The notes under the pieces were generated by a model. It ran no database searches and had not been told where the DNA came from. It saw only the letters and a list, made by a program, of their open reading frames with translations. Made by a program: the position numbers and the translations under genes. From Bugula neritina (Eukaryota; Animalia; Bryozoa), in the NCBI GenBank assembly GCA_964035545.1, contig OZ037770.1:15180642-15244641 (forward strand): a stretch of DNA of 64,000 nt, read 5' to 3'. Below, piece after piece: positions 43,700 through 64,000 of the stretch; positions within the stretch are counted from its first letter, which is position 1; each line of letters starts with the position of its first letter.

Positions 43700-46600
43700 T
43701 CAGTTACTACCACTAACACCTGAGGTACTACTACTAACACCTGAGGTACTACCACTAACACCTAGGGTACTACCACTACCACCTGAGGTACTACCACTAG
43801 CACCTGAGGTACTACCACTAGCACCTGAGGTACTCCCACTAGCACCTGAGGTAGCTCTGGCAGCATTTGACTCAGTAGTGCTGACTTTGTACAGATACAA
43901 CATCTTCATTTCAGTGAGGATATTGTTGATGCTGGGTGAACTGAATTCAGCTGCCTTGTCATCTAGGCAATAGTGTAGGCTCAGTTTTCTAACTACTTGC
44001 TGAATCTAAAAGAAGACAACTTCAAAATTGACAAAATGTAAGCCAAACGAGACAACTTTGTTAGCGAATAAAGAAGCTACATAAGTCATTGTTTTGCAGT
44101 TCTGTGATATAACATTTCTTTCAGTTACCTAAAAGTTCAAAACTTAAATAACCTTCTGAAGATGTTGCAAGCATACAATGCTTTTGGTTTGTATTTTCAC
44201 AGGCAAAACATTTACTGTCGTCAAAACAAATTTATACATTCATGTACAATTATACATTTATGGCACAGATGTTATTTTTAATTTATGCAGCTTGATATAC
44301 GTTGTCAATATTTGTTATACTGCATGTAAGGAAAAGATGCATGTGTTTGAAACTAGAAGCTAACCATTTCAAACAGATCCTCCAAGTGTGTGTTAAAAGA
44401 GTGTCTGTAAAAGGCGAGAACTAATGCCCGAATCATCCAAGCTCCGGAATTTCGGTCTTGATGCATATTTCTACCTACAGCAGTAACTAGCAACTGTAAA
44501 CTCACAAGTTGCAACTTGCAGTGACTAAAACGCAAATAGCAATTAAGTTTGGCATATAGTTGACTGTTAACTTGAGGTTAATTGCCGGTTTAATATTGAC
44601 TACTTAGATTATTTTATTTGTTGGTTGATCCAGCTTAAGTTGTACTCAGTTAGTTTCAGAGATATTATTTCAATTTTTTTGCAATGATTGCTAAGTGAAT
44701 ACGTAGTTATAGCTCTACACTTTGGAGGTTTATCTGGTACTGAGAGTTTCAGCTGGAAAGCGCTATAAGATATTATAGACTAAAGCATATTTTGTTTTTA
44801 ACAGAAGTAATTTTTCTCCTATACATACTGGGCTGTGTAGCATTCATGATGATCATGTCTTCCATTTGCAGCCGATGTGAGGCAGACAACTCCAATGGGT
44901 CGTCATCACTTGGTATGTTGACAGCAGCAGAGTTTGTAACTGGATATGAATCTCCACTGCTGGATCCCATATACATAGTATTACACACATAGTAGACAGC
45001 ATGAAAGTCAGTAGTATAATGTTTTTAAACTGAAAAGTATGTCAATTTCCAAGTTTCATTTTATTTGAAACATGCTGGGGTAAAGTCTTAATGTAAAAAT
45101 AAATATTTGAAACACTTGCTATAGTGTCACGTGTCGGAATATCAATATTTTAAATGTCAGAGTGCCACAGCGTGAAAGTGTCAAAGTGTCAAAGTGTCAA
45201 AATGTCAGAGCGCCAAAGTGTCAAAGTGTCAAACTGCCAGGGTGTCAGAATATCACAGTGTCAAAGTATCAAATTGTCACAGTCTAAAATTCTGAAAATT
45301 ATCCAAGAAACTGAATCAAAAGTTTAGCCTTTAGTATAATGAACCAGCTAACCTGCTACTACTATCAGCACTAACTCTGACATGCGCCACAAGTGCAGGT
45401 GCTTGTGCTGTGCTCTCGGGTTCTTCAGGACTAGAAGTAGACTGGACTTCCATATTCTCTGAACCTGAGGTGTTCTCCTGGTCACTGAAAACCAGATTGG
45501 ATCCACTAAAGGTGAATATTGACAAAGCACGCAGTTCTTCTTCACGAGTAGAGACAGCGGCAGAGGCAGCAGATGCAGCAGAGGCAACTTCCTGTTGATT
45601 GAGTGTAGATGAGACGGTTGGGGGATGAGGATCCACATCCATTCCTTCCCCTTCACCTGCTGTGTGCGTAAGGCTGGTAGAGGAAGATTCTATTGGCTCT
45701 CCAGAGACCTCTACAATAAGAAAAGCAAGCTCGATGTGAAAGAGTGGCTTGGTATCATGCACATGGTTTCAAAATTAGAAGTATTTTGTTACAGTATGTT
45801 TGATAGAGAAAAACTGGTATGTGATAGCAGTAAAATGTGATTACTGTACTGCAAAATTATTTTATATGAATCTCTAAATTTCTAAATTAAACAAATTTAG
45901 CTAATTTTTTTTCATTCTTCAAGCTTTTCGCCTTTCATATCTTAAGCACAATTTGAAGAGTGTAAGCTATCTTTGCTAGTCACTAACTATAATAATTAAG
46001 GTAGAGGCAGGACAAAAGAGTATAATGCAACTAACCATTGGCTAAGCACTGGACTACCACCACTTTAGGTTTCTGTGCCATAAGAGGAAATCTATTGGCT
46101 GACAGGAGTTCAGTCACATGACTAATCTCCAGCTTGTCACCTGCTGCCCCATAAATGCTGTCGCGGCAGCCTTGACTTATGATGACCAGGAAAAACATCT
46201 TGTATACGCCATGAGCTTCAATCTGCGTTTCTTCAGCAATTGCTGTTTTCATTTCCTATATAAGCAATGGATTTCTACCTTTGATAAGCTCATACATGTT
46301 AGGTTAGATGCAAAGTGCTTATATATCGTTTCAGTACAAACGCAAATCTTCTCAGTTAGATTCTTAAACAGTAAAAAAATTGCATTTTAACTTAAAACCT
46401 ATAATTATAGCCGCATGTTTTATATAGTTTTTTAAGATATTACTTTGTTTTATTCAAGAAATAGACAATTCAACTGTTTAATTTGCTACTTGACTTAACT
46501 TAAATATACTAACTTCAGCAGTATAGCTTTTGTGTTCTCCCGTGACGACAAAGTCCAGCTTACTCAACATGTCCTTGACATTACTAAAGTCAACTTCGGA

Positions 46601-49600
46601 ACCAACTCTGGTGTTGTTGGAACTGTTGGAGATGATTAGTGCCCTCCCTCTCGGTGAAGACATTGGGTATTTCTAAAGTAAACTCACGTGTTCAGCTTAC
46701 TTCAAAATACTTTTTTGTGATGATGATTTAGCAGTGAGACTCAAAGATATGTGTAATACGTCAATCATTTGAGAGTTGCATTTAAAACTTGAAATACAGA
46801 GCTTCTGGAGACTGCTACTTTTAAGACTGTCATCAGAACGCACACAGGCACATACTATATATTATATTATTGCAAAAAGTAACTGTGATTCTACAGTAAA
46901 AGTATATATACTTACTAAAACTCCAGTTAGTGGTTGTCTTCTCATGTTTACATTTACCAGGTCCATTTTCATTTCGTTCTCAAGCTCATGGCTGATGAGC
47001 CAATCAAACATGGCAGATATGGCGTTCTGCTTTCGCTGATAGTCACTGATTTTAGCTAAAAACATTAAAGATACTCACTTAACTTTGCAGCAGTAGGCTA
47101 TACTGAATAATGATGTATATTTCTACCCAATAGCATATTTTGTAACAACTTAATGTATGATGATATTGATTTGATATGATGAAGTTTCATATATTTGTTT
47201 TATTAAAAATCTTTTCTATCTAACTCCATTTTCTGAATTGAAGGAAAACACTTAGCTCTTTACTGACCAGATTCTATCTCAAATAGGGAGTTCTGAAATA
47301 TTTCTTTTTCTGCTTCGTTGAGCTCTTTGCCTGAAACAAAATTTAAGCAGTTTCTAAACTTAATGTTGTGCAACTGTCAAATATGAGTCTTTTTTAAAAA
47401 TGCCTTTATTTTTTGCTCAATCATGAAACTCTTTTAAGTACCACAATCAGCAGGAATAAAGTGTTGTTTTGATATCAAGTGTCATTTAAGTAATATATAA
47501 TCTATATAATTATGTGAAATATACGTTTTATTTGGCAAATAATAAATAATATTATTAACAAGAATAATTGCCAAAATGCCTTACATACTCAACTATTTTT
47601 TAAAATTTGTTTTATCTTTTAGTGGTACACTGACAGAGATGGTGAGAAGTGTTTACAAGAATGAATACAAGAAGTTACATATGCAGATAAAATAATTGGC
47701 AAGGGTTGATGAGGGGAACTTACAGGAGAGGATGAGGAAAACTTATAGGGGTTGAAGAGGGAAGCATACGGGGTTGGGGCAAAGGAGCTTACAGGGGTTG
47801 ATGAAGGAAACCAACAAGAATAGATATACAAGCTTGCAAGGAAGAATGAGAAAAAATAAAGGGGTGAATGAGAAAAACTTACAGGGGTAGAAGAAGAAAA
47901 TTTACAGGGGTGGATGAAGGAAAGCTTACAGGGGTGGATGAAGGAAGCTGGAATCAGATCTGGATTCATAATATTTAAACATTTCCTCTCATCAACCGCT
48001 TCATTAATCCACGTAACACCAGAACTCTCTCCAGATTCAAGCACTTCTTCAATCTCGGCTAGGAAACCACTTTTCTCTAACCTACCAGGATCTGGACAGT
48101 CTTGCAGCAAGCAATGTGGACACAAATACTCACACAAATATTGTAACGCCCGCCATGATTGGTGGAGATATCTCATTATAGTCAATATGGAGTCTATAAG
48201 AACTTCCCAAGAACTGTGTATAGTGTTAGCACACGCTGATACTTTAAGCTGCATTTCGCTTTCCTCAGTCTTGTATTGCAATAAAAACTTTGTTAGAGAA
48301 TTTTGGGCCGCTAGACCATTTGAGCATGAGCTAATATTAAACGCACGCAGCCGATGTAAGTTTAGGAGTAGGATTGACATTTGATGGTACGCGTGGTGTG
48401 GTAACTTCAAACCTTTGAAAGTGAAACTTGTGCACAAAACCAGTGTACTGCCTCTAAGAAAGGAGATGTCAATTTCATGCCTTGCGAATGATGGGATCAG
48501 ATAAAGTTTTAAACCAGTTCTGCCGTCTTTGTGCTCATATAGCAAGTTGAAATGTTGAAGCATTTTGACAGCGTGTGAAAGTGCCAACTTGGATTCTGTT
48601 CTCACCAGATATTTAAACAGATGGTCGAGCAGTAAACTGGTTCTATGAAAAAAAGTCAGCCATTGCTTAAAGTCTTTCCTTTCAACCGTTGGTTCATTAT
48701 AACTTAGATATGGCTGGAAATTGTCTTCTCTAAAACTCCATTTTTTTTCTTCATCGTGGTTAAACACTATCTCAAGTAGCTCGACAATCATGTCCATATT
48801 GTGAAACACGTAGCTAGACAACTCCTCACTGTCTTCAAACCAAAGCACATACCCAGCCATATGAGCATATCGAAGGACATTTTTTATTTTAGCTTCTGTA
48901 ATGCCATCTTTCTTAAACTTAGCGTTTAGATCTCTCAGGGACAGGTGACTCGAAGTGTCAAACCTTTCTTTTTGGAGAAATTTAATAATTTTAAACCAAT
49001 TAAATGGAATGACTGTACGGCAATCTTTTTCTTGAATTTTATGCAATAACCGAGATGCTATCTTGTCAAATGTGGTGCTGGAGTGATTTCCTACTTCAAA
49101 AATATCTGCTTCAATGAACATCGGTTGATGTCTGTTTGTGAAGGCCTTTATTTCAACGCGACTATTACCACTTTGAAAGACTTTGGACTTCCATTGGTTG
49201 CAGGCTAATAGGAGCCGCTCTCGATAAGCAGTATAATTTGGCTCGCTAAAAGCATCTTGATGCGTGATAACGAGAATAGGGGATGTGAGTTGAGGGTACA
49301 CTAAATAGAAATGAGCAAACCAATTTACGACCAACTCCTTTGCTGCTGCCAGATCTCCGGATGCTGCCGTTAGTTGCTCAAAATGTTTCAGATTTACGAC
49401 AACAACTGGGATAGAGTTGCTGCGCAGGACAAGCTGATAAGTGGTTTGGTAAGCATCATCTCCTCCAAAATCAAATATCTGTACGGGAAGGCCGTCCAGC
49501 TCAATTTCAACAGAGCTAAACACCCGAGTTGTTTCGTCAAAAGGTGCATCTTCTTCTCTGTTTGTTAAAATTCTCATTCTACTTTTCAAGGACTGAACTA

Positions 49601-50621
49601 GACTGGTTTTGCCAGCCATTTTGCGTCCTACTACAGCTATGGTACATATCATGATTAGGGCTGAAGTCTCGCCTGTCGCAGCTTGGTCTCGGAAGAACTG
49701 CCTTATCTGCCCACACCCTAGATTAGCGACCCCTTCGTACGGTGGATGCTGGAGGTTAATGCAGCCATCACAGTCCAAATCAGTCAAAGTTTTAATAGCC
49801 ATCAGCTCTGGATCTAAATGCTTCAGCTCAACATTCTTGCTTATAACTAATTTCCGTAGATTTGTGAGCTGCAAAACTACTCTTGGCAATTCTACGTGAA
49901 AGCCGTTTCGTGGAATGTAGAGGCAGGACAGAGTGTCTTTACAGGCTTTCAAACTAAAAAGGAACAAAAACATTTAAATCAAATGAACTTGAAAGCTGAT
50001 TATAATACAATCTATTTGGTAATTTTCCTTTAAAGAAATTTTGGAAATTCAAAAACTTTATCCGCATTCAAAAACTGACGCAACATCAGGAGTGACTTTA
50101 GTTATTTATCAACTACAAGAGAGAAAGTACAGCTTTTATATTTCTTACTGATTTGATAATTATTACAACCTTCCAGGTAATGCTGAAAGCTCACACTTTC
50201 CAACATGAAGTTCTACAAGAGATTTTAGTCCGTAGAATATTTCTTCCGCAAGTTGCATCAGTGGATTGTCACTCAGATACAGAATCTCCAAGCTTTCTAA
50301 TCTGCAAATACTAAAATGACGTTCTGTTTTAGGATGAGCATATAGTTTGTTTCATTACCAATATTCTGTTCACATTCACACATTGTGATAACTTTGGTGA
50401 TAAAATTTCTATATTTAATTTGCAAATGGGAATACTACAAAGTTGATTTGGAAATTGCTAAATTTTAATTCTTGTGGCACAGTGAAAAAAATAACAAATA
50501 AGAAACACTATATCTAGAAAATTATATATAGGTCTATATATAATTATACCAACACATGCACGCATATACACATGCACGCATATACACATGCACGCACATG
50601 CATGCACGCACGCATGCACAT

Positions 50622-50668
<47 letters not shown>

Positions 50669-52984
50669 CACACATGTGCTAATAAAATGAAATGCGTTCG
50701 AGTCTACTTAGTGAGTCGATGATCTAAACTAATAAAACTTAAAGTTTTGAGAGGTCTACCTGGTGCAGGTATCGTACACAGATATTATACAATATCTACA
50801 GATCTACCTGGTGGTTATCATACATGACATATATCATACAGTGTCTTCAGATCTACCTGGAGGGCAGGTGGTTCATATTGTTCTTGCTGAGAGTTAAGTT
50901 TTTCAAAGAGTGTAAACTCTGGAAGATGTCATCTGGTAGCCCTGAGGAGAAGTCATTGTGACTGGTTACCAGCTTCTCTAAAGTGCTTACAAACCCGAGG
51001 CTGTGAAACAAACAATTAATATATCTCTGCTTATATCGGTGACAAATTAACAGTGAACATACAAACAAATAAATAATGTCTTGAAAAGTATATATAAGTT
51101 TAATATATATAGATATAAGTATAGTATATATTATAAATGTGTGCACAACATGTGTTTATATATATGGTATCTATTATATAATATTTACCATATAATATAT
51201 ACTATATATGTATGATATATGTTATGTAACTGACTGTAAGCATATTAACTTACCTGGTTGGTAGTGTAGTTAATTCACATCTGCCTATGTATAGTTTCCT
51301 CAAGGAGATCATGGAGTAAAACATGTCATCTGGAAGGTTGTTGAAGAAATGGTTTCTCCGTAAATCAAGTAGCTGGAGGTTGTATAATGCACACATACTA
51401 AAACATTACACAACTGGTTATACATGTATACAACAAGAAACCTTGTCAATTTACTAAAAATCCGACTACTTTCTGTGATGACTAAAGTTGAAGCAACAAT
51501 TTTACAGAAAATCATAAATTTTTTATTGAAAATTTATTTAGCAATAGAGAAAACACAATCATAGTTAAACTATAATAAAGTTTTTAACTATACATTTGTT
51601 CCATGTAAACTTTTATTCATTAAAACAATTAGACATTTTTCTTAATCTCTTGCATAGGATGCTGTTTGTTGTAGAGAGTTTTATACTGATCAACTCTGTT
51701 TAAATTAACTGTTTTCTAAAGTATTTATAACTTTGTGTTGTCAAGCCTGAAAGCTACTTTTTTACTTTAAAAACCACAAAATCAACTTTTTTATTAGCTA
51801 GGTCAACAGTGCTAAAATAAGACAGAAAATATATAAGTCAATGACAAACATACATGTTTGTAGACTGAGAACCAAGGATAATAGTTAGATTTTGGTCTTA
51901 CAACAACGTACCCACTTGACACTTTAGTCAAGCCACAACCTTGCAGCTTCAATTCTCTCAACTCCTTCATAGACCAAAACATTTTATCAGAGAGAGCATT
52001 TTCCAGCCTGTTGTTGTCTAAATATAGACAGTTTAATTGCTCCAGCCCTGTGATACTAAGAAGATGGAAATAATATGAGTATAACGAGTGTAAGAGAATT
52101 GACACAAGATTACATTTCTTAGCTAAATCAGATTTAAGGTTGCAGAGTTTAGACTATTAGTCTTAAAACTAACTAGCCACACAGCAACTAGCTGGTCTTA
52201 CTTTTTATCTCAATTTTATTTGGTAACCTAAGTTCTGTTCTTGCTACTGACATGCAAATAATGAGTGGTAATATGTAACCCCCAACCTTTCTGGGAGTTC
52301 TCTCAGCTGACAGCTACTCAAGTTGAGATGTCTCAGTGTTTGTTGGCACGACTTGAAAACACTCGGCGAAATACCAGTCGACAAATCATTTCCTTCCAAA
52401 TCTATCTTTTCTAAATACTGCAGTTTCTGTAACCTGTAGAAAAATTGCATATATCAACATTTTTATACTCACAGTAACATTTACAGTACTGCAAGATATT
52501 TGCTGCTTCAAACTTTTAAAGATTTATATAGTCTAAACATGTAGAACTTATTCTTTGAAAACATTAGGTATTTGAATAGCAGACTATTTATATTACATAA
52601 TATAGAGATAAACAATCTTGATGTTTATTAAAATTCAAGAGAGGTTGACTGATAAAACGCAATGTTACAGCATATTATTATTATTATACAAGTTATGATA
52701 AAGGCGTTGACTGTAGACTAGCGAGCTCACCTGTTTAAAGTCAGTTTAGACAGGACAACCTTTCTAATGCACAGCTCCCTTAGATATGGTGCCAGTTTGG
52801 TGAAGTTAGGCGACTCTCCTTTGAATATCATGTGAGTTATGAATGCCTCTTCATATCCTGTCAGCTCTTCCTTTATTTCGTACTTACTCTGTAATGAGCA
52901 CTTCACCTCATAGTTGAATAGAGCTGTGGTTGGTAGAGCTTGTTTAGTGTGTCTGTACCAGATGTTGTATTCTCTTACAGACAT
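43700..52984 (-). CDS. MFHAS1/MASL1-like ROCO protein (LRR-ROC-COR) fused to a C-terminal catalytically degenerate caspase domain (paralogue B), about 1494 aa
   Basis: 15 phase-compatible exons: 52984-52731; LRR exons 52433-52287, 52055-51912, 51397-51254, 51000-50857, 50310-50170; 49953-47930 (last LRRs, ROC: GRKMAGKTS, DFGG, THQD; COR: GYVLWFEDSEELSSYVFHN, CPHC); linker 47330-47268, 47055-46916; caspase large subunit 46672-46514, 46255-46036; inter-subunit linker 45710-45353; small subunit 44959-44829, 44474-44365, 44005-43700 (TGA). Summed CDS 4485 nt. Confidence 0.85.
43705..43852 (-). repeat. Coding 21-bp repeat giving a (STSGASG)n C-terminal tail on paralogue B
   Basis: About 7 copies of ACCACTAGCACCTGAGGTACT, in frame in the last exon. 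Confidence 0.85.
50552..50675. repeat. (GCAC)n microsatellite
   Basis: Intronic simple repeat. Confidence 0.9.
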
Positions 52985-54141
52985 GGCTAGCTCAGGTAAA
53001 ATCTTTAGGTGTTTAATCCATTCTCACCTTTGAAATACAATGCATTATTACTTCTTCATATTCCAAGATGCCACAAAGTAGAATAAAGTTATTATAATAT
53101 AATGGAAGACAAACATCTAAGAGTATAAAACATTATAATTTTGCATTTGATATTGCAAATTGTAATTAGTATACTATTGCATTTTGATCATTTGTAATTA
53201 CATAATATGCACAAAAAGACTTGGCAAGTAAAAGTTTTTTAAAAGGTTTAGTCCAGTTATGATAAAAGTATGCAATCAATCAGTAAGTATAACAGCTTGT
53301 AGCTAGCCTTCTTAAAGATGCTGTCATATAAACTACCGAAAAGTATCAAAATGAACTCACTTGCTTACAGGAGTCATTATTGACATCTGTTAGCAGGTTA
53401 CCTGCCAACAGATGTCAATATCAGTCACTATTTTGAATAGTACACATAAGTAGCATGCTACTAATTGAATCCCTCCAAAAAATTTGAATATAACAATGCA
53501 ACTTGAAGCTAAACAATCATTCATAACCAAGTAGACTATATGATTGGCTAAAAAATTGTTGAGACCAGAATAGCTTTTGATAGCAGCAAAAGCTCTCAGT
53601 TTGTTTGCTGAGCTAGCTAAGTATTGTTTAGTAAAATACTCTTTTGTCTTTTGTAAAACACAAACAACATGGCCGTAGATCACTAAACAGCAGTTTTTGT
53701 AGCAATTGCTAGTAGCATGAACAGCTGTTCGTTTGTGTATGAGAGAAAGCAATCACTGCTAAATTTTAACTTACAGAAAATTTGAATCTGTTCACCTGAG
53801 AACAGATCATAAGGATTTCTCAACTTTTTCAATAAAACACAAATATATTTCTTCATAACAGTGGTAGCACATGAGCAAATTTTTTTAAAAGTACAATTAA
53901 GTATACAAAGTGTAAATATTGCAAAATATATGAATTGTAAATCAAAGTATAAAATACAATTTACAACAGCCGTTAAGAATTTGTTTACTAAAATTTGCCT
54001 GGAATACACTTTTTTTCAAGAAATTGAAATGCAAGTAAATATTGTGTTTTAAAGTGTTAAAAACTTGATCACCCCTGCTGTAGTCATGTGATCATTTAGT
54101 TTTGAGCATTTGAAGATTAAGGAATACTAGAAGGCTATTTT

Positions 54142-57100
54142 CTAAAGGACTGCTTCTTCTGGGACCAGGAAGACCTTTCTCATATGAGTCAGACGACATC
54201 TGATCTCAGGTATCTGGCCGTAACCTCCTTCGACCTTTTTCTTTTCATAATTGTAGTTTGCACTGTACCTTGCAACCACCTGCTGAATCTACAAACATTA
54301 GGAGTATGAAAAGTACTGGAGAGCACATTGAAGGTTGCTATTAGTATAATGAATGGCACTAGCAGGTTGTTATTAGTATATTGAATGACACTAGCAGGTT
54401 GTTATTAGTATAATGAATGGCACTAGCAGGTTGTTATTAGTATGATGAATGACACTAGTAGGTTGTTATTAGTATGATGAATGGCACTAGCAGGTTGTTA
54501 TTAGTATGATGAATGGCACTAGCAGGTTGTTATTAGTATGATGAATGACACTAGCAGGTTGTTATTAGTATGATGAATGGCACTAGCAGGTTGTTATTAA
54601 TAATATGATGAATGGCACTAGCAGGTTGTTATTAGTATGATGAATGACACTAGCAGGTTTTTATTAGTATGATGAATGGCACTAGCAGGTTGTTATTAGT
54701 ATGATGAATGGCACTAGCAGGTTGTTATTATTATGATGAATGGCACTAGCAGGTTGTTATTAGTATGATGAATAACACTAGCAGGTTGTAAGCCTAGGGC
54801 CACACTGTGCGTATTTTCGCATGCGAAAATTAAAATCACGAGTAGCAAAGGTGTCCACTGTAGCGTCAGTGATGCGTGATAAATAAAGCTTTCATTTTTA
54901 AATCGCACTCGCTTTCAATAAAACGCAATTTACTGGAATATAGCACTAAATAAAGAAATTGGGCTCGCTGAATAGCTACCAGCCAATTAGGTGACTACGA
55001 CAGAGACGATTCGCACTTGCGTTGAAAATGCAGAGCGACAAGTGCGAAGGTTTTCTCAACGCGCACAGTGGACACCTTTGCTACTTGTGATTTCAATTTT
55101 CGCATGCGAAAATACGCACAGTGTGGCCCTAGGCTTAGTATGATGAATGGTAGTCAGCAATGAGCAATGCAGATGCTTTTACTGTGTTAGCTGTCAGCCA
55201 TAAGACAGAATAGGGGAAGATCAGCTTTAAAATTGAGCCAAAACATAAACAGCAGCCATAACAGTCATATTTTTTGCACGATAATTGTAGGCCTATCACT
55301 ATATTATCTGTATATGCAGCTTAACATGAAAACATAACTCCAACAGCATGGCCTATATATTTTTGCTATGTTTTAGTTACTGCCCAGATAGAAATAATCT
55401 AGCAAGCAATAATGTTACTGTCACAAATTCTGAGTGTACATATACCTATGAATAGACTTACGGGGTTTTTCCTAATGATTATACACGAATGTTCATAAAT
55501 ATTCTAGACTGATCAAAGAAATGGGTCATTGTTCATTGTTACTGTTTTGGTTAGTCATGTTAACTACTGCCCAGCAATGTAAACAAGGTATTGCGCAATA
55601 ATTGCGAAATAACCATGGAAATTCCAATGTTTTGTTTTGTTTTGATTCTCTATAAATAGTATTGGCATGTGGGGAATGTTTCCTACTAGAATCTTCTATA
55701 CTGGAATGCTTGAGAATGTTCTAGAGTTTTTTGTTTACTATAAATACTGAGGCAGTTGTGTTTACGAATCAGTTCATTCTTGGAGTTCATTTTTATTAAT
55801 TCATCTGTGCATATCTTACTAAAGGAATAAAGTCTACTTATATCCACAACTCTATTTACTCACAACTGGATTAGCAAGCTGTATGCTACTTGTCTCTACA
55901 CTTCTGACTACCAGACTTTTCGAACTCGTCACACTGCTACCAACAGTTTTGTGACAATTGGGGGCTGCTCCGGGAAGTCTCAGTCGCACACAGGGAAGTT
56001 ATTAGTTACAACGTGAGTATACACAGGATTAATTAACAGTTGTTGAGACATTATGGCGTTGTTGGAAAGAGTGACACAGATGGGTAAAGATCTTGGACTG
56101 GTGGATGACAAGCTCATAGCTTTTGTTGAAAAGAACCTACCCATTTTTGCTGCACAAGAAGAAAAAGAAAAGGACCGAGAGGAAAAAGAAAAGGACCGAG
56201 AGGAGCGGAGATTAGAGCGTGAGGCGGAAAGGATCAGGCAAGAAAATGAGAAAGCCTTAATGGAGATGAAGATAAAAGCTGACCAGGAGGCAGAAGAGAG
56301 AAGACAACGGCATGAATTAAATATGGAAAAGCTGAAAGCTGACACAAGTTTGGAGCACTCAAGACATGAGAGCACCAGGTTAGAAATAGCTAACAAACCA
56401 AAACCAAAAATACCATTCTTTGATGAGAAGGTGGATGAAATGGATAGCTATTTAGAGCGGTTTGAGTGGGTTGCCGAAGGATGTAACTGGGACAAGGGAG
56501 ATTGGCCCTACCATCTCAGTCAGTACCTAAGGGGTACGGCAACAGAAGCTTACATCCGGTTGTCACCTACCGATCGTAGAGATTATAAAAAAGTCAAAGA
56601 AGCCTTGTTGGAGCGCTTTAACTTGACTCAAGAGGGCTACAGAAAAAAGCTCAGAGAGGCAGAAGCTTACGAGGATGAAACTCCTGCCCAACTATTCACT
56701 AGGATAGAAAGTTATGTGCACAAGTGGGTGGAGCTTTCAGGGGGCATGGACATAGCCAAACTAGTGGCGACTGAACAATTTATATCATCATGCCCAGACG
56801 ACCTAGCTGTGCATTTAAAGCAAAGTTCCTACAACAGCAGTGAGGATATGTGTGATGCAGCGTCGCTGTTCTTGCACGCTCGTGGAAGGAAACTAGCAAA
56901 GACAAAGAAAACTAATACAAAAAGGATGGAAAACACACCTGCCGGTAGCATGAATGCTGAACAAGGAAGTAAAAGCGATGGGGCATGCTTCATCTGCAAA
57001 GATAAGTCACACATTGCTCGTAACTGCCCACGGCGAGGGAAGAAGTACTGTTCACATTGCAAGATGAACAACCACAATACGTCAGACTGCAGAAAGTATG

Positions 57101-60100
57101 GTGGGAGGTCAGTGCATGCTGCTGCTGCAATAGGGACTACTCAGAATAAGACTGTGGTCATAGATCCAGGAATCTCATCTAAAGTGGAAGAACCTACAGA
57201 AATCATAGTTAATGGTAAAAAGTTTGTCAACGCTGCTGTCTGCAAGAATGGACCTAAATTCAAAGATGGGGGCACAGCGATATTTGATGCGGAAGTTAAT
57301 GGCCAACGAGCTACTGTAATGCGCGACACCGGCTGTGGTTGCATTGTAGTCAATGCAAAGTATGTGCAACCTCAACACTTGACTGGAGAATCAGTTTATC
57401 TGAATATGGCTGATGCAAGTGTTAGGGAGGCTCAGTGGGCACTTATCTCAGTGCGCTCACCATTTTACAATGGTGTCGTCAAAGCTGCAGTAATGGACAA
57501 GACGATTTGTGACCTGCTTATTGGGAATGTGGACGGAGCAAGATCAGCTGACCAGCCGCTAGAAAACTGGAAGGACTGCGCCGTAACCACAAGAGCTCAA
57601 GCTGTCAAGGAGAAGTCAGGAGACAAACCACTAATGATTGATTCAAATGCTAACCCATTAAGTATAGGGAAAGATGAGATAGCCAGACTGCAGAGGGATG
57701 ACCCCACATTGGAGCGTTTCTTCGATGCAAAAGAAGTGAAGGAGAAAAAGGGATGCACCACTAGGTTTGTGGTGAGGAATAAGATTCTGTACCGTGAGTA
57801 CACCGACTCCGAGTCTGCCAGTGTAAAACCCGTTAAACAACTCATGGTACCCAGTTCACTGAGGAAGGAAGTTCTACAGAAAGCTCATGACTGCACAATG
57901 AGCGGACACCTAGGAGTAAAGAAAACCACTGATAGAGTGCTTTCCAACTTCTTTTGGCCAGGACTAAACGGAGATGTCGTACGTTTCTGTCAGTCATGTG
58001 ACATTTGCCAGAAGACGGTGAAAAAAGGCTCAATCATGAAAGTTCCAGTACAGGAAACTCCACTAATTGACACCCCATTCAAGAGATGTGCAATAGACCT
58101 AGTCGGACCAATTAACCCTCCAAGTGAGAAAGGACACCGCTACATCCTAACTTTAGTTGACTATGCTACAAGATACCCTGAAGCTACACCATTGAAGAAC
58201 ATTGACTCAGCTACTGTAGCTGAAGCGCTGCTTGACATATACAGTCGTGTTGGGATACCAGAGGAGGTGATAAGCGACCAAGGAACTCAATTCATCTCGG
58301 ACTACATGAAAGAGTTTACCAGATTACTTGACATGCGACAACTTCCTACTTCACCATACCATGCAATGGCCAATGGACTTGTGGAAAAGTTCAACGGAAC
58401 CCTCAAGAGTATGTTAAAAAAGTTGTGTGCTAAAGAGCCAAGACAGTGGCATCGATTCATCAATGCGGCTCTATTTGCATATAGAGAAGTCCCACAGGAA
58501 TCAACAGGCTTCGCCCCATTCGAGTTACTCTATGGAAGAACTGTACGTGGACCAATGTACATCCTGCGACAACTTTGGACAAAGGAAGACACTGCCGATG
58601 AAGTCAAGACCTGCTATCAACATGTTTTTGAATTGAGAGAGCGTTTAGATGACATGATGGAAATGGCACTAGCTTCGCTAAAAGACAGTCAAAAAAGATA
58701 CAAACACTATTTTGACAAGAAAGCTAAGCAGAGAGACTTCAAACCTGGTGACAAAGTGCTCATTCTTCTACCTACGGATGGAAATAAATTGCTGATGCAT
58801 TGGCAAGGACCATTCAATATTGAGGAGAAAGTCAGACTGAATGACTACATTATCAACATTAGAGGCAAGAGGAGAACATACCATGCCAACATGCTGAAGA
58901 AATACTTTGAACGGGAGACGCCTACCGACTCTATGACTGCTGGAGCTGTGAGGACTCTAGATGCTGCTGGTGCTGGAATTATTGATCACGATAAGGAAAG
59001 AGAAGAAAGCCAAGATGATTTGTTGGACCTGTACAGTAAGAAACAGCAGAATGATGAGATGGGCTATGTATTTACAGAACTTCAGAATCAAGGTGGAGTC
59101 AATCAAAGGAAAGGACAATGTTGGAGCCGATTATCTAAGCCGAATTGACTCAGAATTTTAAGTAGTTAGGAGAAATGATCAAGATAATTTCTCTTAGAAT
59201 GGGGGGTTGTCACAAATTCTGAGTGTACATATACCTATGAATAGACTTACGGGGTTTTTCCTAATGATTATACACGAATGTTCATAAATATTCTAGACTG
59301 ATCAAAGAAATGGGTCATTGTTCATTGTTACTGTTTTGGTTAGTCATGTTAACTACTGCCCAGCAATGTAAACAAGGTATTGCGCAATAATTGCGAAATA
59401 ACCATGGAAATTCCAATGTTTTGTTTTGTTTTGATTCTCTATAAATAGTATTGGCATGTGGGGAATGTTTCCTACTAGAATCTTCTATACTGGAATGCTT
59501 GAGAATGTTCTAGAGTTTTTTGTTTACTATAAATACTGAGGCAGTTGTGTTTACGAATCAGTTCATTCTTGGAGTTCATTTTTATTAATTCATCTGTGCA
59601 TATCTTACTAAAGGAATAAAGTCTACTTATATCCACAACTCTATTTACTCACAACTGGATTAGCAAGCTGTATGCTACTTGTCTCTACACTTCTGACTAC
59701 CAGACTTTTCGAACTCGTCACACTGCTACCAACAGTTTTGTGACAGTTACTGAAAATAATAAAAATGATTTTTCAAATAAAGATTTTAATTGTTCAACTG
59801 TTAGAAAAAGAATAAAATCTAGCAAGATATTAAAATAACAAAAAGTTTCAGTTTAAAAATACTTTATTTTTAAACTGAATTTTAGTGAAAATAGACACAT
59901 AGTTTGTTACCATTTTGAAAAGGGTGTGAAGATCAAGTTGATGAGCGTATTGGTAGAAGGCGACCACAGAGGCTCGTATTAACCAGGACCCAACTTTCTT
60001 GTCCCTGAAGGCTACATATCCTGATAGAAATAGGCTATAATTGTTAGTGTTTCAACATTTACTAGAATAAAACTAAAACTAAAAATACATGATACTAGTA

Positions 60101-63100
60101 ACTATTTGAGTAATACTGAATCGGTGTGATTACCACAATTAGTTCTAGCTTGTCGTCTGCTATAACTTAGCAATTGAAAAAAAATAAATGTTTTAAACTA
60201 ACTATTTTTTGATGGTCAAGTTCAAGTGCCATTCTACGCATGCAGTCATTTTACCTAATTTAGTACACATTGGAAATCTCTAGTTTTTAGCTATTTCTTA
60301 CAATTTAGCTGCTAATAAACATGGGTTTTTGCTCAAAACTAGTAAAATGTCAATAAATACACCTAAATAATTTGGTTCGTTTTAATCTTGCTTGATTTCT
60401 CATGTTTTTCCTAATTATTCAGCTACTTTTAATTGCGGACACAATCAAATAGCTGCCTCAAAGTCAGCAGTAGTTTACCTGGCTGACTCGCCTTAATCAT
60501 CAACAAGTCGTCTCCTGCAAGAACTTCATTCTGGTTTGACTTGACAGGTTCAGTGTTGGAGGCCCCAGAGCTTCTAGGAAGAAAGAGAGTGACTTAAGTT
60601 ACCATAGATATAAGGTACAGCTTTATATGTCTAAGTGACTATATTATTTAGTTTAATCAAGTGTTGGCATAAGTAATTTTGACTATAGCATCGTAAAAAC
60701 TACTACCACTCGTGAGTTATACTATACAGTGTATGCTGAAAGTGAATTACACATAAATATGCTAATAAATTTGTTATAGTAGAGTATGTACAGCATGTTT
60801 GACTCATTATCCCAGGTATTCATGGTGTCGCTGAAAGAGATCCACTGCTCTTCTGAAAAGCTTGGGTCCTCATCTACGCTCCCCTCACTACTCTCTTCAA
60901 ACTCATCATGGTCATCAGGCAAATCGACTAGACTGTCCTTGTTAACTAGAATGTTATTTTGAGCATTAAAAAATAATAAACAGCTGGAACAAAACTACAA
61001 TAAAACAAAGCTTAAAGGATTGCTCTATCTTGTCTAATAAATGGCCATTTAGGTAAAACACACATAATATTGTGTTTTTCTAAGCATGCATTGACAAAAA
61101 GCATTTGACCAAAGGTAGAAAAAGTTAGTTGAAGTTGAGGGTGTAGATTGGTAACAGCCAAAACGCCGATTTTGAAATGAGCTGGGAACTGTGACGTAAC
61201 AGCGCCAGCATTCCTGCTGGTCACGTGACTATACAAATGAATAACTATAGAAATATGACTGTGAGATGTAATCTTTTAGCTTGCAATTTGTATATTTATA
61301 GAAGTGCAAATGTGAATTATCTCAATCTATAGTTTTTTGACATTTTAAATAACATGTATGTGAAAACATTAGGCTATATTTTGCTTGTAAACATTAGAAA
61401 AAAGCCTTGCAAAAACATGCATTCTTTAGGATGAATGCCTGCGATCGATCTAAACTAAGTCAGATCGTGCAATATTACGGGCACACCAAAGCTGACCTAT
61501 ATAGCGCACTGTAACTGCTTGAGCGTAATTGGTTGATGTTGTGCCCAGCAACCTTGAATACTAGCGTTATAGTTAGCACGTGCAGCATAGTTACTGGCGT
61601 TCACACGTCACGTATTAGGCTATTCTTTTTCATGGCTGAAAATTTTACCTCCCTCAAAATTGGAATTTTGAAAAGCTGTTTTCTAGGCACATATCCCTTT
61701 GCAAAGCCACAATTGTTTGCATACACATTAGATTATAGTTCATAATTATAATGTGATTGTAATAAACTAAGATAGAGCAATCCTTTAAGGGGGCAATGCA
61801 AATGTAACAGATTGCAGCAATACATATAATCTGTTTGTGGCAAATTGAGTTAAATATGAAGCACAACCTGTATGTATGTTAAAGCATGTCTCACCAAACA
61901 TGTTGCGGTTGTGCTTTTCAATAAATAAATGCAAAACTAAACTCTGTGTAAAGATTTACAATCACCCTAAGAATAAATAAAATATACCTCCAGAGCAACT
62001 TTGTATGATCACAACTTTGGGTTTTCCTGTCATGGCAGGAAAATTCTTCGGGGAGATCAAACTCAACAGATCATCCATGGAAACCTCGTCATCTGGTCCA
62101 CCACATCCGCCAATCTTATCTTTCCTTCCATGACTCATTAAGACCAGAAAGAACATTTTGTATGACTCATGCTCCTGGAGGCGACTCTCTTGAATGATTG
62201 CTTCTTTCATCTCCTGTAAAGATTTAAGTAAGTAGTGTTGGAAACTCAAGCTCATGCACTATATTGGTTTATAAAAACAATGGTCTCAGTCTCAACCTAA
62301 AATAGCATTATACCGTAAAATACAAAATTTTTCACTTTTTTTAGTGTTGAAGGTTTTTAGTGTTTGTGAGTGCAATTACTTTAAGAATACTAAAATAGTA
62401 TTATTGATGATCGTTCTTTCTAATTATCTACCAGACAATTGTTAAAGATCGCAGCAGCTTGTCAACAATGAAATATGCTTTAACCACAAAGAGCATGTGT
62501 GTCATTGATTATATAAATTCCTTACTTATATAGTAATACGTAAAATGATGGTTATATAATAGTTTTGCTAAACAGAAGTGGTGTGGTGGTTCGTGGAACT
62601 ACCAGCAGCACAACATGTAGGGTCGCGTAATTGACCCGGAACAATGGATAGCCAATTAGCGTATTCGATAGTTAGCAGCAATTATAGTTTCCTGCTGCTA
62701 AGTCAGTCGAAGCTAGAGTGTCAAATAGATTAGATGTGTAAATTGTCTGAATATATTGTATCGTTTTTATAATGTATAATTGTGTGTAAAATATACTCGT
62801 TCACTCGACTTATCCTGGTGCAGTTCTATAGCGAATAAGTAGACTCTCTGGATAGCATATCAACCCTAAATCTGGAAAACATAACAGTACTACATAAACA
62901 ACCTTGTGCTCACCTCAGCAGTGTAGTCTTTGTGTTCTCCTGTGACGACAAAGTCCAGCTTACTCAGCATGTTCTTGACATTCTGAAAGTCAACTTCAGA
63001 ACCAACTCTGGTGTTGCTGGAACTATTAGAGATGATTAGTGCCCTCCCTCTGGGTGAAGACATGGGGTAAACTTGAGGCATCTGCAATTTTAGAAAAAGT

Positions 63101-64000
63101 CAAATATTAGTCCTAAAGTCTTTCTCAAGTAGTTCAATTACACAAATTACCTACAACATATGACTTAGATTTACCATTCTAGCATCTACTTCTAAATCAT
63201 CTTCATCTAGTTTTCTCTTTCTTTTCCTAGAATAAAAATCTTTTGGTTCCATGATGATTTCAGCCGTGTTCTCATTCTCAGCCAGCCATCCTGCAATCTT
63301 TTTGATAGCTGTGCCTCGGGCAGTGTACTCGTTAGCTTCATCTACAATTCATAATCGCGATTCAGAAAAGATTTTCTAGCTGCATTTTATATTTTATAGC
63401 TGAAGTATTTGGAATTTAGTGGATTAATACAATTTAACTAGTACTACTACTACTGCTTAAATGTCCATCTTGTATGTCATATCATTACAATAAGAAACTT
63501 TGATATTGAAGAGGTATTAAAATTTGAAAGATATTATATGCATGAGTTGTTCAGCCAGAAACTCACATTTCTCCAGAAACTGGTACAGCTTTTCTTGATC
63601 TTCAAAGCTCAGATCTTGGCCTGAACATAAAGTTATGTATTTGTTATGCTAATGTTTTAATGACATGCCATTTATATATGCTGTTTTGTCATAATAATAG
63701 TATCTAGATGCTAATTCTGCTATACCCAATATAAATTCAAACAGTCTATGACAGGAATTTGATAAAAATACTAACACAATTTTCTATGCAGCTGTAAAGC
63801 TGCTGTTGTTGCACCAATCATGCATTGATTTCAATTCTAGAAAGTTGCACAGCTTCAATGCAAGGAAAACGAATGACAAGGTCTTCTCACGTAGAGAAAA
63901 TCATGACTCATCAAACAGGTCATCAGTAATATTGGTGCAACAAAGTTTAAAAAAGTTCCAAATTTTATGGCAATACTCACAAGGCCACACCAGGACACTC
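54142..64000 (-). CDS. 3' part of a second ROCO-caspase fusion gene (paralogue A) with intact caspase catalytic residues; 5' part lies beyond the window
   Basis: Exons (64000)-63981 (SVLVWP, homologous to the COR end ASFIHP of paralogue B), 63620-63567, 63341-63175, 63081-62914 (PRGRALIISN...RVGSEVD), 62213-61988 (LMSHG...KPKVVIIQSCSG), 60945 to about 60800 (donor uncertain), 60573-60479 (DLLMIKASQPG), 60020-59911 (GYVAFR...GSWLI), 54288-54142 (QIPEIRCRLT...TAG). Intron positions and phases match paralogue B. Confidence 0.85.
54341..54788. repeat. About 32-bp minisatellite (CTAGCAGGTTGTTATTAGTATGATGAATGGCA)n
   Basis: About 14 tandem copies in the last intron of paralogue A. Confidence 0.9.
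54789..55137. mobile_element. MITE with about 75-bp TIRs inserted into a minisatellite
   Basis: TAAGCCTAGGGCCACACTGTGCGTATTTTCGCATGCGAAAATT.../...AATTTTCGCATGCGAAAATACGCACAGTGTGGCCCTAGGCTTA. TA (or TAA/TTA) flanks. The minisatellite resumes after it. Confidence 0.85.
55419..55956 (+). repeat. 5' LTR
   Basis: Direct repeat of 59208-59745; TG...CA ends; TATAAA near 55739 and AATAAA near 55826. Confidence 0.95.
56053..59148 (+). CDS. Gag-protease-integrase polyprotein of the Gmr1-type retrotransposon (no RT domain)
   Basis: 1031-aa ORF: SCAN-like Gag region, two CCHC knuckles (CFICKDKSHIARNC, CSHCKMNNHNTSDC), aspartic protease RDTGC, integrase HHCC (HDCTMSGHLG...CQSCDIC), DDE (IDLVG, SDQGTQF, NGLVEKFN) and GPF motif. 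No YxDD motif. Confidence 0.93.
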   Translation: MALLERVTQMGKDLGLVDDKLIAFVEKNLPIFAAQEEKEKDREEKEKDREERRLEREAERIRQENEKALMEMKIKADQEAEERRQRHELNMEKLKADTSLEHSRHESTRLEIANKPKPKIPFFDEKVDEMDSYLERFEWVAEGCNWDKGDWPYHLSQYLRGTATEAYIRLSPTDRRDYKKVKEALLERFNLTQEGYRKKLREAEAYEDETPAQLFTRIESYVHKWVELSGGMDIAKLVATEQFISSCPDDLAVHLKQSSYNSSEDMCDAASLFLHARGRKLAKTKKTNTKRMENTPAGSMNAEQGSKSDGACFICKDKSHIARNCPRRGKKYCSHCKMNNHNTSDCRKYGGRSVHAAAAIGTTQNKTVVIDPGISSKVEEPTEIIVNGKKFVNAAVCKNGPKFKDGGTAIFDAEVNGQRATVMRDTGCGCIVVNAKYVQPQHLTGESVYLNMADASVREAQWALISVRSPFYNGVVKAAVMDKTICDLLIGNVDGARSADQPLENWKDCAVTTRAQAVKEKSGDKPLMIDSNANPLSIGKDEIARLQRDDPTLERFFDAKEVKEKKGCTTRFVVRNKILYREYTDSESASVKPVKQLMVPSSLRKEVLQKAHDCTMSGHLGVKKTTDRVLSNFFWPGLNGDVVRFCQSCDICQKTVKKGSIMKVPVQETPLIDTPFKRCAIDLVGPINPPSEKGHRYILTLVDYATRYPEATPLKNIDSATVAEALLDIYSRVGIPEEVISDQGTQFISDYMKEFTRLLDMRQLPTSPYHAMANGLVEKFNGTLKSMLKKLCAKEPRQWHRFINAALFAYREVPQESTGFAPFELLYGRTVRGPMYILRQLWTKEDTADEVKTCYQHVFELRERLDDMMEMALASLKDSQKRYKHYFDKKAKQRDFKPGDKVLILLPTDGNKLLMHWQGPFNIEEKVRLNDYIINIRGKRRTYHANMLKKYFERETPTDSMTAGAVRTLDAAGAGIIDHDKEREESQDDLLDLYSKKQQNDEMGYVFTELQNQGGVNQRKGQCWSRLSKPN
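59208..59745 (+). repeat. 3' LTR
   Basis: Direct repeat of 55419-55956; followed by TSD GTTAC. Confidence 0.95.
60248..60430. mobile_element. Truncated copy of the 19963-20352 MITE family
   Basis: Colinear similarity to 19963-20147 (TAATTTAGTACACA, TTTTTAGCTATTT, CAAAACTAGTAAAA, CAATAAATACACCTA, CCTAATTATTCAGCTACTTTT). Confidence 0.75.

What the first reader, a model, noticed from the sequence alone, without database searches (positions are those of the whole stretch)
43700..52984. ROCO GTPase (LRR-ROC-COR, MFHAS1-like) fused to a whole caspase domain
Seen: 15 phase-compatible exons splice into one ORF of about 1494 aa. It carries roughly a dozen LRRs, a ROC GTPase (GRKMAGKTS, DFGG, THQD), an MFHAS1-like COR (GYVLWFEDSEELSSYVFHN, CPHC), a short linker, and both caspase subunits (PRGRALIISN, KPKVVVVQ, DMIIMNATQP, GAWMIRAL). 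Established: ROCO proteins dimerise through ROC-COR in a nucleotide-dependent way; initiator caspases activate by induced dimerisation, normally via CARD/DED adaptors. Inference: sensor (LRR), switch (ROC-COR) and effector (caspase) are hard-wired in one chain, i.e. a single-component NLR-like death/immune receptor that uses a GTPase rather than a NACHT ATPase. I do not know of this architecture being described, but I could not search for it.
Basis: partly seen in the sequence, partly recalled or inferred. Interest (0 to 1): 0.93.

Follow-up and report, generated by a model that had tools for sequence, protein, structure and literature searches.

The report
Paired ROCO-caspases with complementary dead sites
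This moss-animal (bryozoan) gene joins a leucine-rich-repeat surface, an LRRK2-like GTPase switch and a caspase fold, but its caspase has lost its cutting residues, while the sister gene next door has the caspase residues but has lost the GTPase ones, so the two look like halves of one two-protein cell-death or immune receptor.

Summary
The 15-exon model is real: 1494 aa, all introns GT-AG. It encodes LRR-ROC-COR-caspase in a Bugula neritina-type genome. A second Bugula lineage has the same changes, under purifying selection (dN/dS 0.19), so this is a maintained pseudo-caspase. Its ROC motifs are intact.

The same-strand neighbour ending 1.16 kb upstream (gene A) is its sister paralogue (97/92) and its mirror image: intact caspase dyad, dead P-loop, G3 and G4. 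An outgroup gene keeps both sets of motifs. One caspase exon is about 90% identical between the two genes, against 51-61% for the others compared.

Best reading (0.55): a two-chain receptor in which this protein supplies the GTP switch and a cFLIP-like partner domain, and A supplies the protease. No RNA or biochemical support was available.

The architecture is not new: it is listed for bacteria, and amphioxus has LRR-caspases. This scan found the bryozoan family before on other DNA (at least 100 ROC-COR exons here). I found no account of the reciprocal pair.

The parts
43700..52984 (-). Gene B (the finding): 15 exons, 1494 aa, LRR-ROC-COR-pseudocaspase; single copy in the genome
   Evidence: orthologue KAF6038146.1
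52731..52984 (-). Exon 1, 84-aa N-terminal cap; no Pfam hit; nearest relative is exon 1 of gene A (36%)
50170..52433 (-). Exons 2-6 (52433-52287, 52055-51912, 51397-51254, 51000-50857, 50310-50170): symmetric phase-2 exons of 141-147 nt, about two LRRs each; conserved, dN/dS 0.09
47930..49953 (-). Exon 7: last LRRs, ROC with intact G1 GRKMAGKT (49628), switch-I Thr, G3 DFGG (49472), G4 THQD (49265), and COR with CxxC
   Evidence: dN/dS ROC 0.08, rest 0.14
46916..47330 (-). Exons 8-9 (47330-47268, 47055-46916): last COR helix and linker, about 67 aa; no CARD or death-fold hit
46514..46672 (-). Exon 10: start of the caspase large subunit, Arg179-equivalent kept; about 90% DNA-identical to the same exon of gene A, bounded by the exon edges
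46036..46255 (-). Exon 11: dead catalytic dyad. His site is Gln (codon 46174-46172, SQG); Cys site is Leu (codon 46045-46043, QCLAN)
   Evidence: sequence; same in the second lineage
44829..45710 (-). Exons 12-13 (45710-45353, 44959-44829): about 145-aa Ser/Glu-rich inter-subunit linker, then start of the small subunit
44365..44474 (-). Exon 14: small subunit; substrate loop reads RNMHQD, with Gln at the Arg341-equivalent (codon 44460-44458)
   Evidence: sequence; compared with AFRD in gene A and ATRS / SARH in Watersipora
43700..44005 (-). Exon 15: last helix, dimer-interface strand PSINNILT, and a Ser/Gly repeat tail; absent from the public model KAF6038146.1 but conserved in DNA of the second lineage
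54142..64000 (-). 3' part of gene A (KAF6038145.1 / P0173), the sister LRR-ROC-COR-caspase; runs out of the window to about G000:C6:15249140. Exons here: end of ROC-COR exon to 63981, 63620-63567, 63341-63175, 63081-62914, 62213-61988, two linker exons near 60940-60480, 60020-59911, 54288-54142
61988..62213 (-). Gene A catalytic exon: intact SHG (His 62132-62130) and QSCSG (Cys 61997-61995)
52985..54141 (.). 1157-bp spacer between the stop of A and the ATG of B; the A-then-B order also holds in two other assemblies

Best explanation
Gene B is one half of a two-gene receptor that arose by tandem duplication of an LRR-ROC-COR-caspase, after which each copy lost the opposite catalytic site. SHOWN: B has intact GTPase motifs and a dead caspase; neighbour A has an intact caspase and dead GTPase motifs; they are sisters, adjacent, single-copy and under purifying selection. 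INFERRED: A and B form a heterodimer through COR and through the caspase interface. The nucleotide state of B's ROC, set by whatever the LRRs bind, is the only working switch and decides whether A's caspase gets a productive partner. B's pseudo-caspase acts as cFLIP-L does on caspase-8: it completes and tunes one active site. I favour the heterodimer being the active protease over B being a brake that lets go on GTP binding, at about 60:40, because A has Arg at two interface-strand positions where relatives have small residues, which should disfavour an A:A dimer. The output is probably limited proteolysis in cell death or immune signalling; ligand and substrate are not identified.
For: Dead dyad in B in two lineages. 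B pseudo-caspase core without exon 10: dN/dS 0.19, P 7e-05; ROC 0.08; LRR 0.09. A's ROC reads GFENLERM at G1, NI-S at G3 and TNKG at G4; in this genome the G-K-T positions read E-R-I; A's ROC-COR still folds as a Roco. A's caspase core dN/dS 0.10. A+B clade 97/92, with outgroup P0003 at 100/99 under a mixture model; the outgroup gene has GKS, DFGG, THKD, SHG and NACSG. Orthologues of both A (P0057, also degenerate) and B (P0002) occur in one further sample as a much more distant sequence type. Exon 10 is shared only by A and B. Precedent: CFLAR lies beside CASP8 and forms an active heterodimer with it (PMC7586951; PMC11121540).
Against: It is one pair, and no interaction, co-expression or activity was measured. 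Dead copies occur elsewhere in the family: P0064 and P0055 have degenerate P-loops, and earlier scan notes report two other Cys-less copies (not checked), so a reciprocal pattern could arise by chance. The distant B orthologue P0002 keeps G1 and G4 but has lost the G3 Asp and the switch-I Thr, so B's switch may not be needed everywhere; its caspase exons are not on the contig. The exon kept alike in A and B is not the main caspase dimer interface (my knowledge of caspase structure). The interface-strand argument rests on alignment to caspase-3 from memory.
Confidence: 0.55

Rival explanations
1. B is a general brake or decoy: a conserved dominant-negative that traps active ROCO-caspases of the wider family, or is bait for pathogen caspase inhibitors, with no special tie to A.
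For: Conserved, single-copy and catalytically dead among at least 81 intact caspase Cys motifs. C. elegans CSP-2 and CSP-3 are inhibitors of this kind (own knowledge).
Against: Does not explain why the sister next door lost exactly the other site, nor the exon shared only with A. B's COR is only about 35% identical to the other paralogues.
Confidence: 0.18
2. A and B work independently. B became a non-proteolytic ROCO scaffold like MFHAS1, and A a GTP-independent protease. Adjacency is only a trace of the duplication, and the exon-10 likeness is neutral gene conversion.
For: Independent losses of either site occur in the family. Gene conversion between neighbours needs no selection.
Against: B's caspase fold is still under purifying selection and A's dead ROC-COR still folds, which suggests that both serve as binding surfaces. 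Both copies persist in a distant sequence type.
Confidence: 0.18
3. One reading: B alone is sensor, switch and active caspase, perhaps using the Cys one residue before the canonical site (QC in QCLAN) as nucleophile.
For: A Cys is present in QCLAN in both lineages; the Arg179- and Gln283-equivalents are kept.
Against: His→Gln, canonical Cys→Leu and Arg341→Gln all occur together; the alignment to caspase-2 has no gap there.
Confidence: 0.04
4. The caspase exons are not spliced to ROC-COR; transcripts stop at 47619.
For: No RNA run was available. The exon 7 frame runs on to a stop at 47619.
Against: The run-on is a low-complexity intron repeat. The donor at 47930 is conserved, 21 of 29 fetched paralogue loci have a caspase exon within 1.5 kb, and NCBI models from two genera join the domains.
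Confidence: 0.03
5. B is a decaying pseudogene.
For: Catalytic residues are lost.
Against: Open frame and intact splice sites in 15 exons; dN/dS of 0.09 to 0.38 in every region at dS 0.13 to 0.31.
Confidence: 0.02

Closest known systems
Bacterial LRR-AP-GTPase(ROC)-COR-effector conflict proteins (PMC8195603)
   Same: Same domain order; caspase is one of at least 24 listed C-terminal effectors.
   Different: Bacterial and single-chain. No reciprocal dead/live pair is described for them in the passages read, although the same paper describes an active/inactive two-gene STAND system (nSTAND2).
cFLIP-L / caspase-8 (CFLAR beside CASP8)
   Same: Adjacent paralogue whose His and Cys are both replaced; forms a heterodimer that can activate the live caspase.
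   Different: cFLIP uses DEDs and an adaptor platform. Here the prodomain is LRR-ROC-COR and the live partner has itself lost a catalytic domain. The replacements differ (Gln/Leu against Arg/Tyr).
MFHAS1 / LRRK / C. tepidum Roco (ROCO family)
   Same: LRR-ROC-COR fold and motifs; NCBI names Watersipora relatives 'MFHAS1 homolog'.
   Different: No kinase; a C-terminal caspase fold instead; about 15% identity to solved ROCO structures; heterodimer with a pseudo-GTPase proposed here.
Bryozoan LRR-ROC-COR-caspase family (e.g. XP_067947674.1, XP_067948342.1)
   Same: Same architecture and homologous caspase exons; at least 100 ROC-COR exons in this genome.
   Different: Most members checked have both sets of motifs and many sit in recent clusters. 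B and A form a separate, older, single-copy clade with conserved LRRs.
Amphioxus LRRs-caspase (PMC2575513)
   Same: LRRs and a caspase in one chain, proposed as a direct link from recognition to apoptosis.
   Different: All have QACXG; the paper mentions no ROC-COR.
Paired NLRs (plant sensor/helper pairs; NAIP-NLRC4) (own knowledge)
   Same: Linked genes that split the work of one receptor.
   Different: STAND ATPases, not ROCO GTPases; plant pairs are usually head-to-head, whereas this pair is head-to-tail, and here both LRR arrays are kept.

Membership tests
ROCO | ROC GTPase domain directly followed by COR | tested here: met
   Pfam Roc, COR-A, COR-B in order, below gathering cut-offs; Foldseek top hits LRRK1, CtRoco, LRRK2 at E 1e-20 or better
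ROCO | G1, G2, G3, G4 nucleotide motifs | tested here: met
   Gene B: GRKMAGKT, ETT, DFGG, THQD. Gene A does not meet this.
ROCO | GTP binding and hydrolysis, nucleotide-dependent dimer cycle | not testable with these tools
   needs biochemistry
Caspase (C14A), active | Caspase fold with large and small subunits | tested here: met
   PF00656 on exons 10 and 11 and 1.7e-21 on P0152; caspase-2 and caspase-9 are the best PDB hits
Caspase (C14A), active | Catalytic His (SHG) and Cys (QACxG) | tested here: not met
   SQG and QCLAN
Caspase (C14A), active | S1 pocket Arg179, Gln283, Arg341 | tested here: not met
   Arg179 and Gln283 kept; Arg341-equivalent is Gln
Pseudo-caspase (cFLIP-like in function) | Caspase fold kept under selection without the dyad | tested here: met
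   dN/dS 0.19, P 7e-05
Pseudo-caspase (cFLIP-like in function) | Heterodimer with, and regulation of, an active caspase | not testable with these tools
   only single chains can be folded here; needs experiment
cFLIP orthologue | Tandem N-terminal DEDs | tested here: not met
   no DED or CARD hit in any exon or in P0152
NLR | NACHT or NB-ARC STAND ATPase | tested here: not met
   the NTPase is a Ras-like ROC
Diversifying immune receptor | Fast-evolving LRRs or copy-number expansion | tested here: not met
   B's LRR exons have dN/dS 0.09; single copy

The most novel reading that the evidence does not exclude
An obligate heterodimeric 'split' ROCO-caspase receptor, cross-complemented in both enzyme domains: a GTPase-live, protease-dead chain controls a GTPase-dead, protease-live chain in trans, and one caspase exon is kept alike in both by continuing gene conversion. 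It would be a natural pseudo-ROC, an independently evolved cFLIP analogue, and a system in which the ROCO nucleotide cycle has a direct protease read-out.
Probability: 0.4. Interest if true: 0.86.

Novelty: new variant of a known kind. Interest (0 to 1): 0.72.

Why it matters
How the ROC-COR nucleotide cycle and dimer state control an attached enzyme is still debated for LRRK2 and its bacterial models (PMC5714945, PMC6337361). A natural pair in which only one chain has GTPase motifs and only the other has protease motifs separates switch from output. Caspase activity would report directly on whether ROC acts in trans, and on whether the dimer or the monomer is the 'on' state. It also suggests that a large, uncharacterised animal family of one-chain death or immune receptors has evolved its own cFLIP-like and paired-receptor regulation.

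Tried and rejected
CARD in the linker (exons 8-9): it resembled the start of the caspase-9 CARD by eye, but Pfam and the Atlas gave no hit and its first part is the family's last COR helix; rejected.

RNA support: one run holds the stretch and it shows uniform intron depth, heterozygous bubbles and no joints, so it is DNA.

Paralogue motifs therefore come from 1.5-kb flanks and from pattern or protein searches of the genome. The pattern searches print the letters they match; one search is the only direct view of gene A's P-loop in this genome. A longer P-loop pattern found nothing.

Searches for the caspase exons of the distant B orthologue found none. A length-restricted homologue search with gene A returned nothing. 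The locus of P0064 (dead P-loop, Watersipora) shows no called neighbour within 10 kb.

Two lines were misframed (gene A core; B 'rest ROC+COR') and are replaced. One search crashed and one search did not finish.

The annelid mention reported in earlier scan notes could not be found.
Full report
OBSERVATION. The region 52984-43700 on the minus strand holds 15 exons with GT-AG introns of 212-599 nt. Phases match at every junction, and the total is 4485 nt, or 1494 codons plus a stop. Exons 2-6 are symmetric phase-2 LRR exons. Exon 7 (2024 nt) carries the last LRRs, ROC and COR. Exons 10, 11, 13, 14 and 15 carry the caspase fold, split by a linker of about 145 aa. The exon 7 model (pLDDT 88.8, pTM 0.89) matches LRRK1, C. 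tepidum Roco and LRRK2. Where a full-length chain was needed I used public records by their ids (P0152, P0173).

ORIGIN. The exon 7 cluster contains KAF6038146.1 of Bugula neritina (1348 aa, 93% identical), and relatives are Watersipora subatra RefSeq proteins. The genome is 216 Mb. It is therefore most likely B. neritina or a cryptic sister lineage; synonymous divergence from GCA_010799875.2 is 0.13-0.31. No RNA run holds the stretch; run X1 behaves as diploid DNA. Splicing is inferred, not observed.

THE FAMILY. Three searches of the genome list at least 100 distinct ROC-COR exons (my count of unique places, a lower bound). Of 29 paralogue loci fetched, 21 have the first caspase exon within 1.5 kb. 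Eighty-one sites encode KPKxxxx[Q/E]xC, against none for the reversed control; these include caspases that are not fused to ROC-COR. Watersipora models show the whole architecture with intact dyads. Earlier notes of this scan reported the family on many other windows. The architecture is listed for bacteria (PMC8195603), and LRRs-caspase for amphioxus (PMC2575513). No paper on the bryozoan family turned up in the library searched.

In gap-free alignment to the family and to caspase-2, the His motif reads SQG and the Cys motif QCLAN. The substrate loop reads RNMHQD where relatives have Arg. The Arg179- and Gln283-equivalents remain. The second lineage has the same residues. The pseudo-caspase core, leaving out exon 10, has 12 non-synonymous and 15 synonymous differences: dN/dS 0.19, P 7e-05 against neutrality. 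ROC has 0.08 and the LRR exons 0.09. The gene is single-copy. It is a maintained pseudo-caspase with a conserved, non-diversifying LRR array and intact GTPase motifs.

A second gene on the same strand ends at 54142, 1157 bp before this gene's ATG. It is KAF6038145.1, an LRR-ROC-COR-caspase, and the order is the same in two other assemblies, which both belong to the second lineage. Its caspase has SHG, QSCSG and AFRD and dN/dS 0.10. Its ROC has lost the motifs: GFENLERM at the P-loop, no switch-I Thr, NI-S at G3, TNKG at G4. In this genome the G-K-T positions read E-R-I at the expected place. The domain still folds as a Roco (pLDDT 85.4).

In a ROC-COR tree under LG+C20, A and B are sisters (97/92), each with an orthologue from a more distant sequence type in JGI sample 3300003318, and the next branch is P0003 (100/99). 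Both are long branches, so attraction is possible, but exon 1 and exon 11 of B also find A as nearest relative. The P0003-type gene has GKS, DFGG and THKD and a caspase with SHG and NACSG, so the ancestor most likely had both activities. The distant A orthologue P0057 is also degenerate. The distant B orthologue P0002 keeps G1 and G4 but has lost the G3 Asp and the switch-I Thr, which is a real weakness for the claim that B is always the switch.

EXON 10. This exon is 88-95% identical in DNA between A and B, while the six other exon pairs compared are 51-61% identical and the ROC-COR exons 24% at protein level. The likeness stops at the exon edges, and no other locus shares it. Among the four copies from two lineages, one site separates A from B, one separates the lineages, and the rest are mostly singletons. 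The outgroup is about 54% identical in protein to both. This fits gene conversion confined to the exon, last acting near the split of the lineages. Whether selection maintains it is not shown.

MECHANISM. Established knowledge: ROCO proteins dimerise through COR, and the C. tepidum protein is dimeric with GDP or no nucleotide and monomeric with GTP (PMC5714945). [quoted passage not shown] Inference: A and B heterodimerise, B's ROC is the switch, and B's pseudo-caspase completes one active site on A. A's interface strand reads PEIRCRLT, where Watersipora members read PTSxCTFT or similar and B reads PSINNILT. By alignment to caspase-3 from my own knowledge, the two Arg lie near the two-fold axis and should disfavour A:A, which tilts me towards the heterodimer being the active form. 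The opposite polarity, in which B holds A inactive until GTP binding frees it, is nearly as consistent. I put the pair model at 0.55, a general decoy at 0.18 and independent functions at 0.18.

VERDICT. The architecture is a known kind, present in bacteria and widespread though undescribed in bryozoans. What is distinctive at this locus is the reciprocal pseudo-enzyme pair, for which I found no description in papers or in earlier scan notes. It rests on sequence evidence from one locus. Novelty: new variant of a known kind. Interest 0.72.

Noticed in passing
window 55419-59507: LTR retroelement with two identical 300-nt LTRs and a 1033-aa plus-strand frame (56047-59145; SCAN, integrase zinc finger, rve core) in the last intron of gene A. 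It is absent from the other lineage, so the insertion is very recent. No reverse transcriptase hit in that frame.
   Followed up: partly
G000 clusters on C1, C4, C5, C6: About 35 of 81 intact caspase Cys motifs read E-[VTA]-C instead of Q-A-C, i.e. Glu at the Gln283 position of the Asp-binding pocket; possibly a changed P1 specificity.
   Followed up: no
P0064 (XP_067948342.1), P0055: Other family members with degenerate P-loops outside the A clade; P0064 keeps an intact caspase dyad. Pseudo-ROC domains seem to have arisen more than once.
   Followed up: partly
L062:5935-8331: The outgroup gene has NACSG, with Asn at the Gln283 position; this low-coverage contig also has a break in its ROC-COR exon that other members of the cluster lack.
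   Followed up: no
window 54238-54883 and 54789-55137: 32-bp minisatellite next to gene A's last exon, and a 349-bp element with 73-nt inverted ends (MITE-like).
   Followed up: no
window 53378-53420: 43-nt near-perfect palindrome in the spacer between genes A and B.
   Followed up: no
L031:12483-12999: In the other lineage the donor region of exon 5 is repeated about ten times at 46-bp spacing; the window has only about three such copies near 50757-50864.
   Followed up: no
window 43700-43860: The C-terminal tail of gene B is a 21-nt tandem repeat encoding GASGSTS-like units.
   Followed up: no
JGI sample 3300003318 (L032, L060, L063): The sample holds both a near-identical B. neritina gene A and far-diverged A and B orthologues (38-44%), so it probably contains a second bryozoan species.
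   Followed up: partly
window 26639-27540: Long Thr/Ser-rich open frames from low-complexity repeat; no Pfam hit for the plus-strand frame tested.
   Followed up: no
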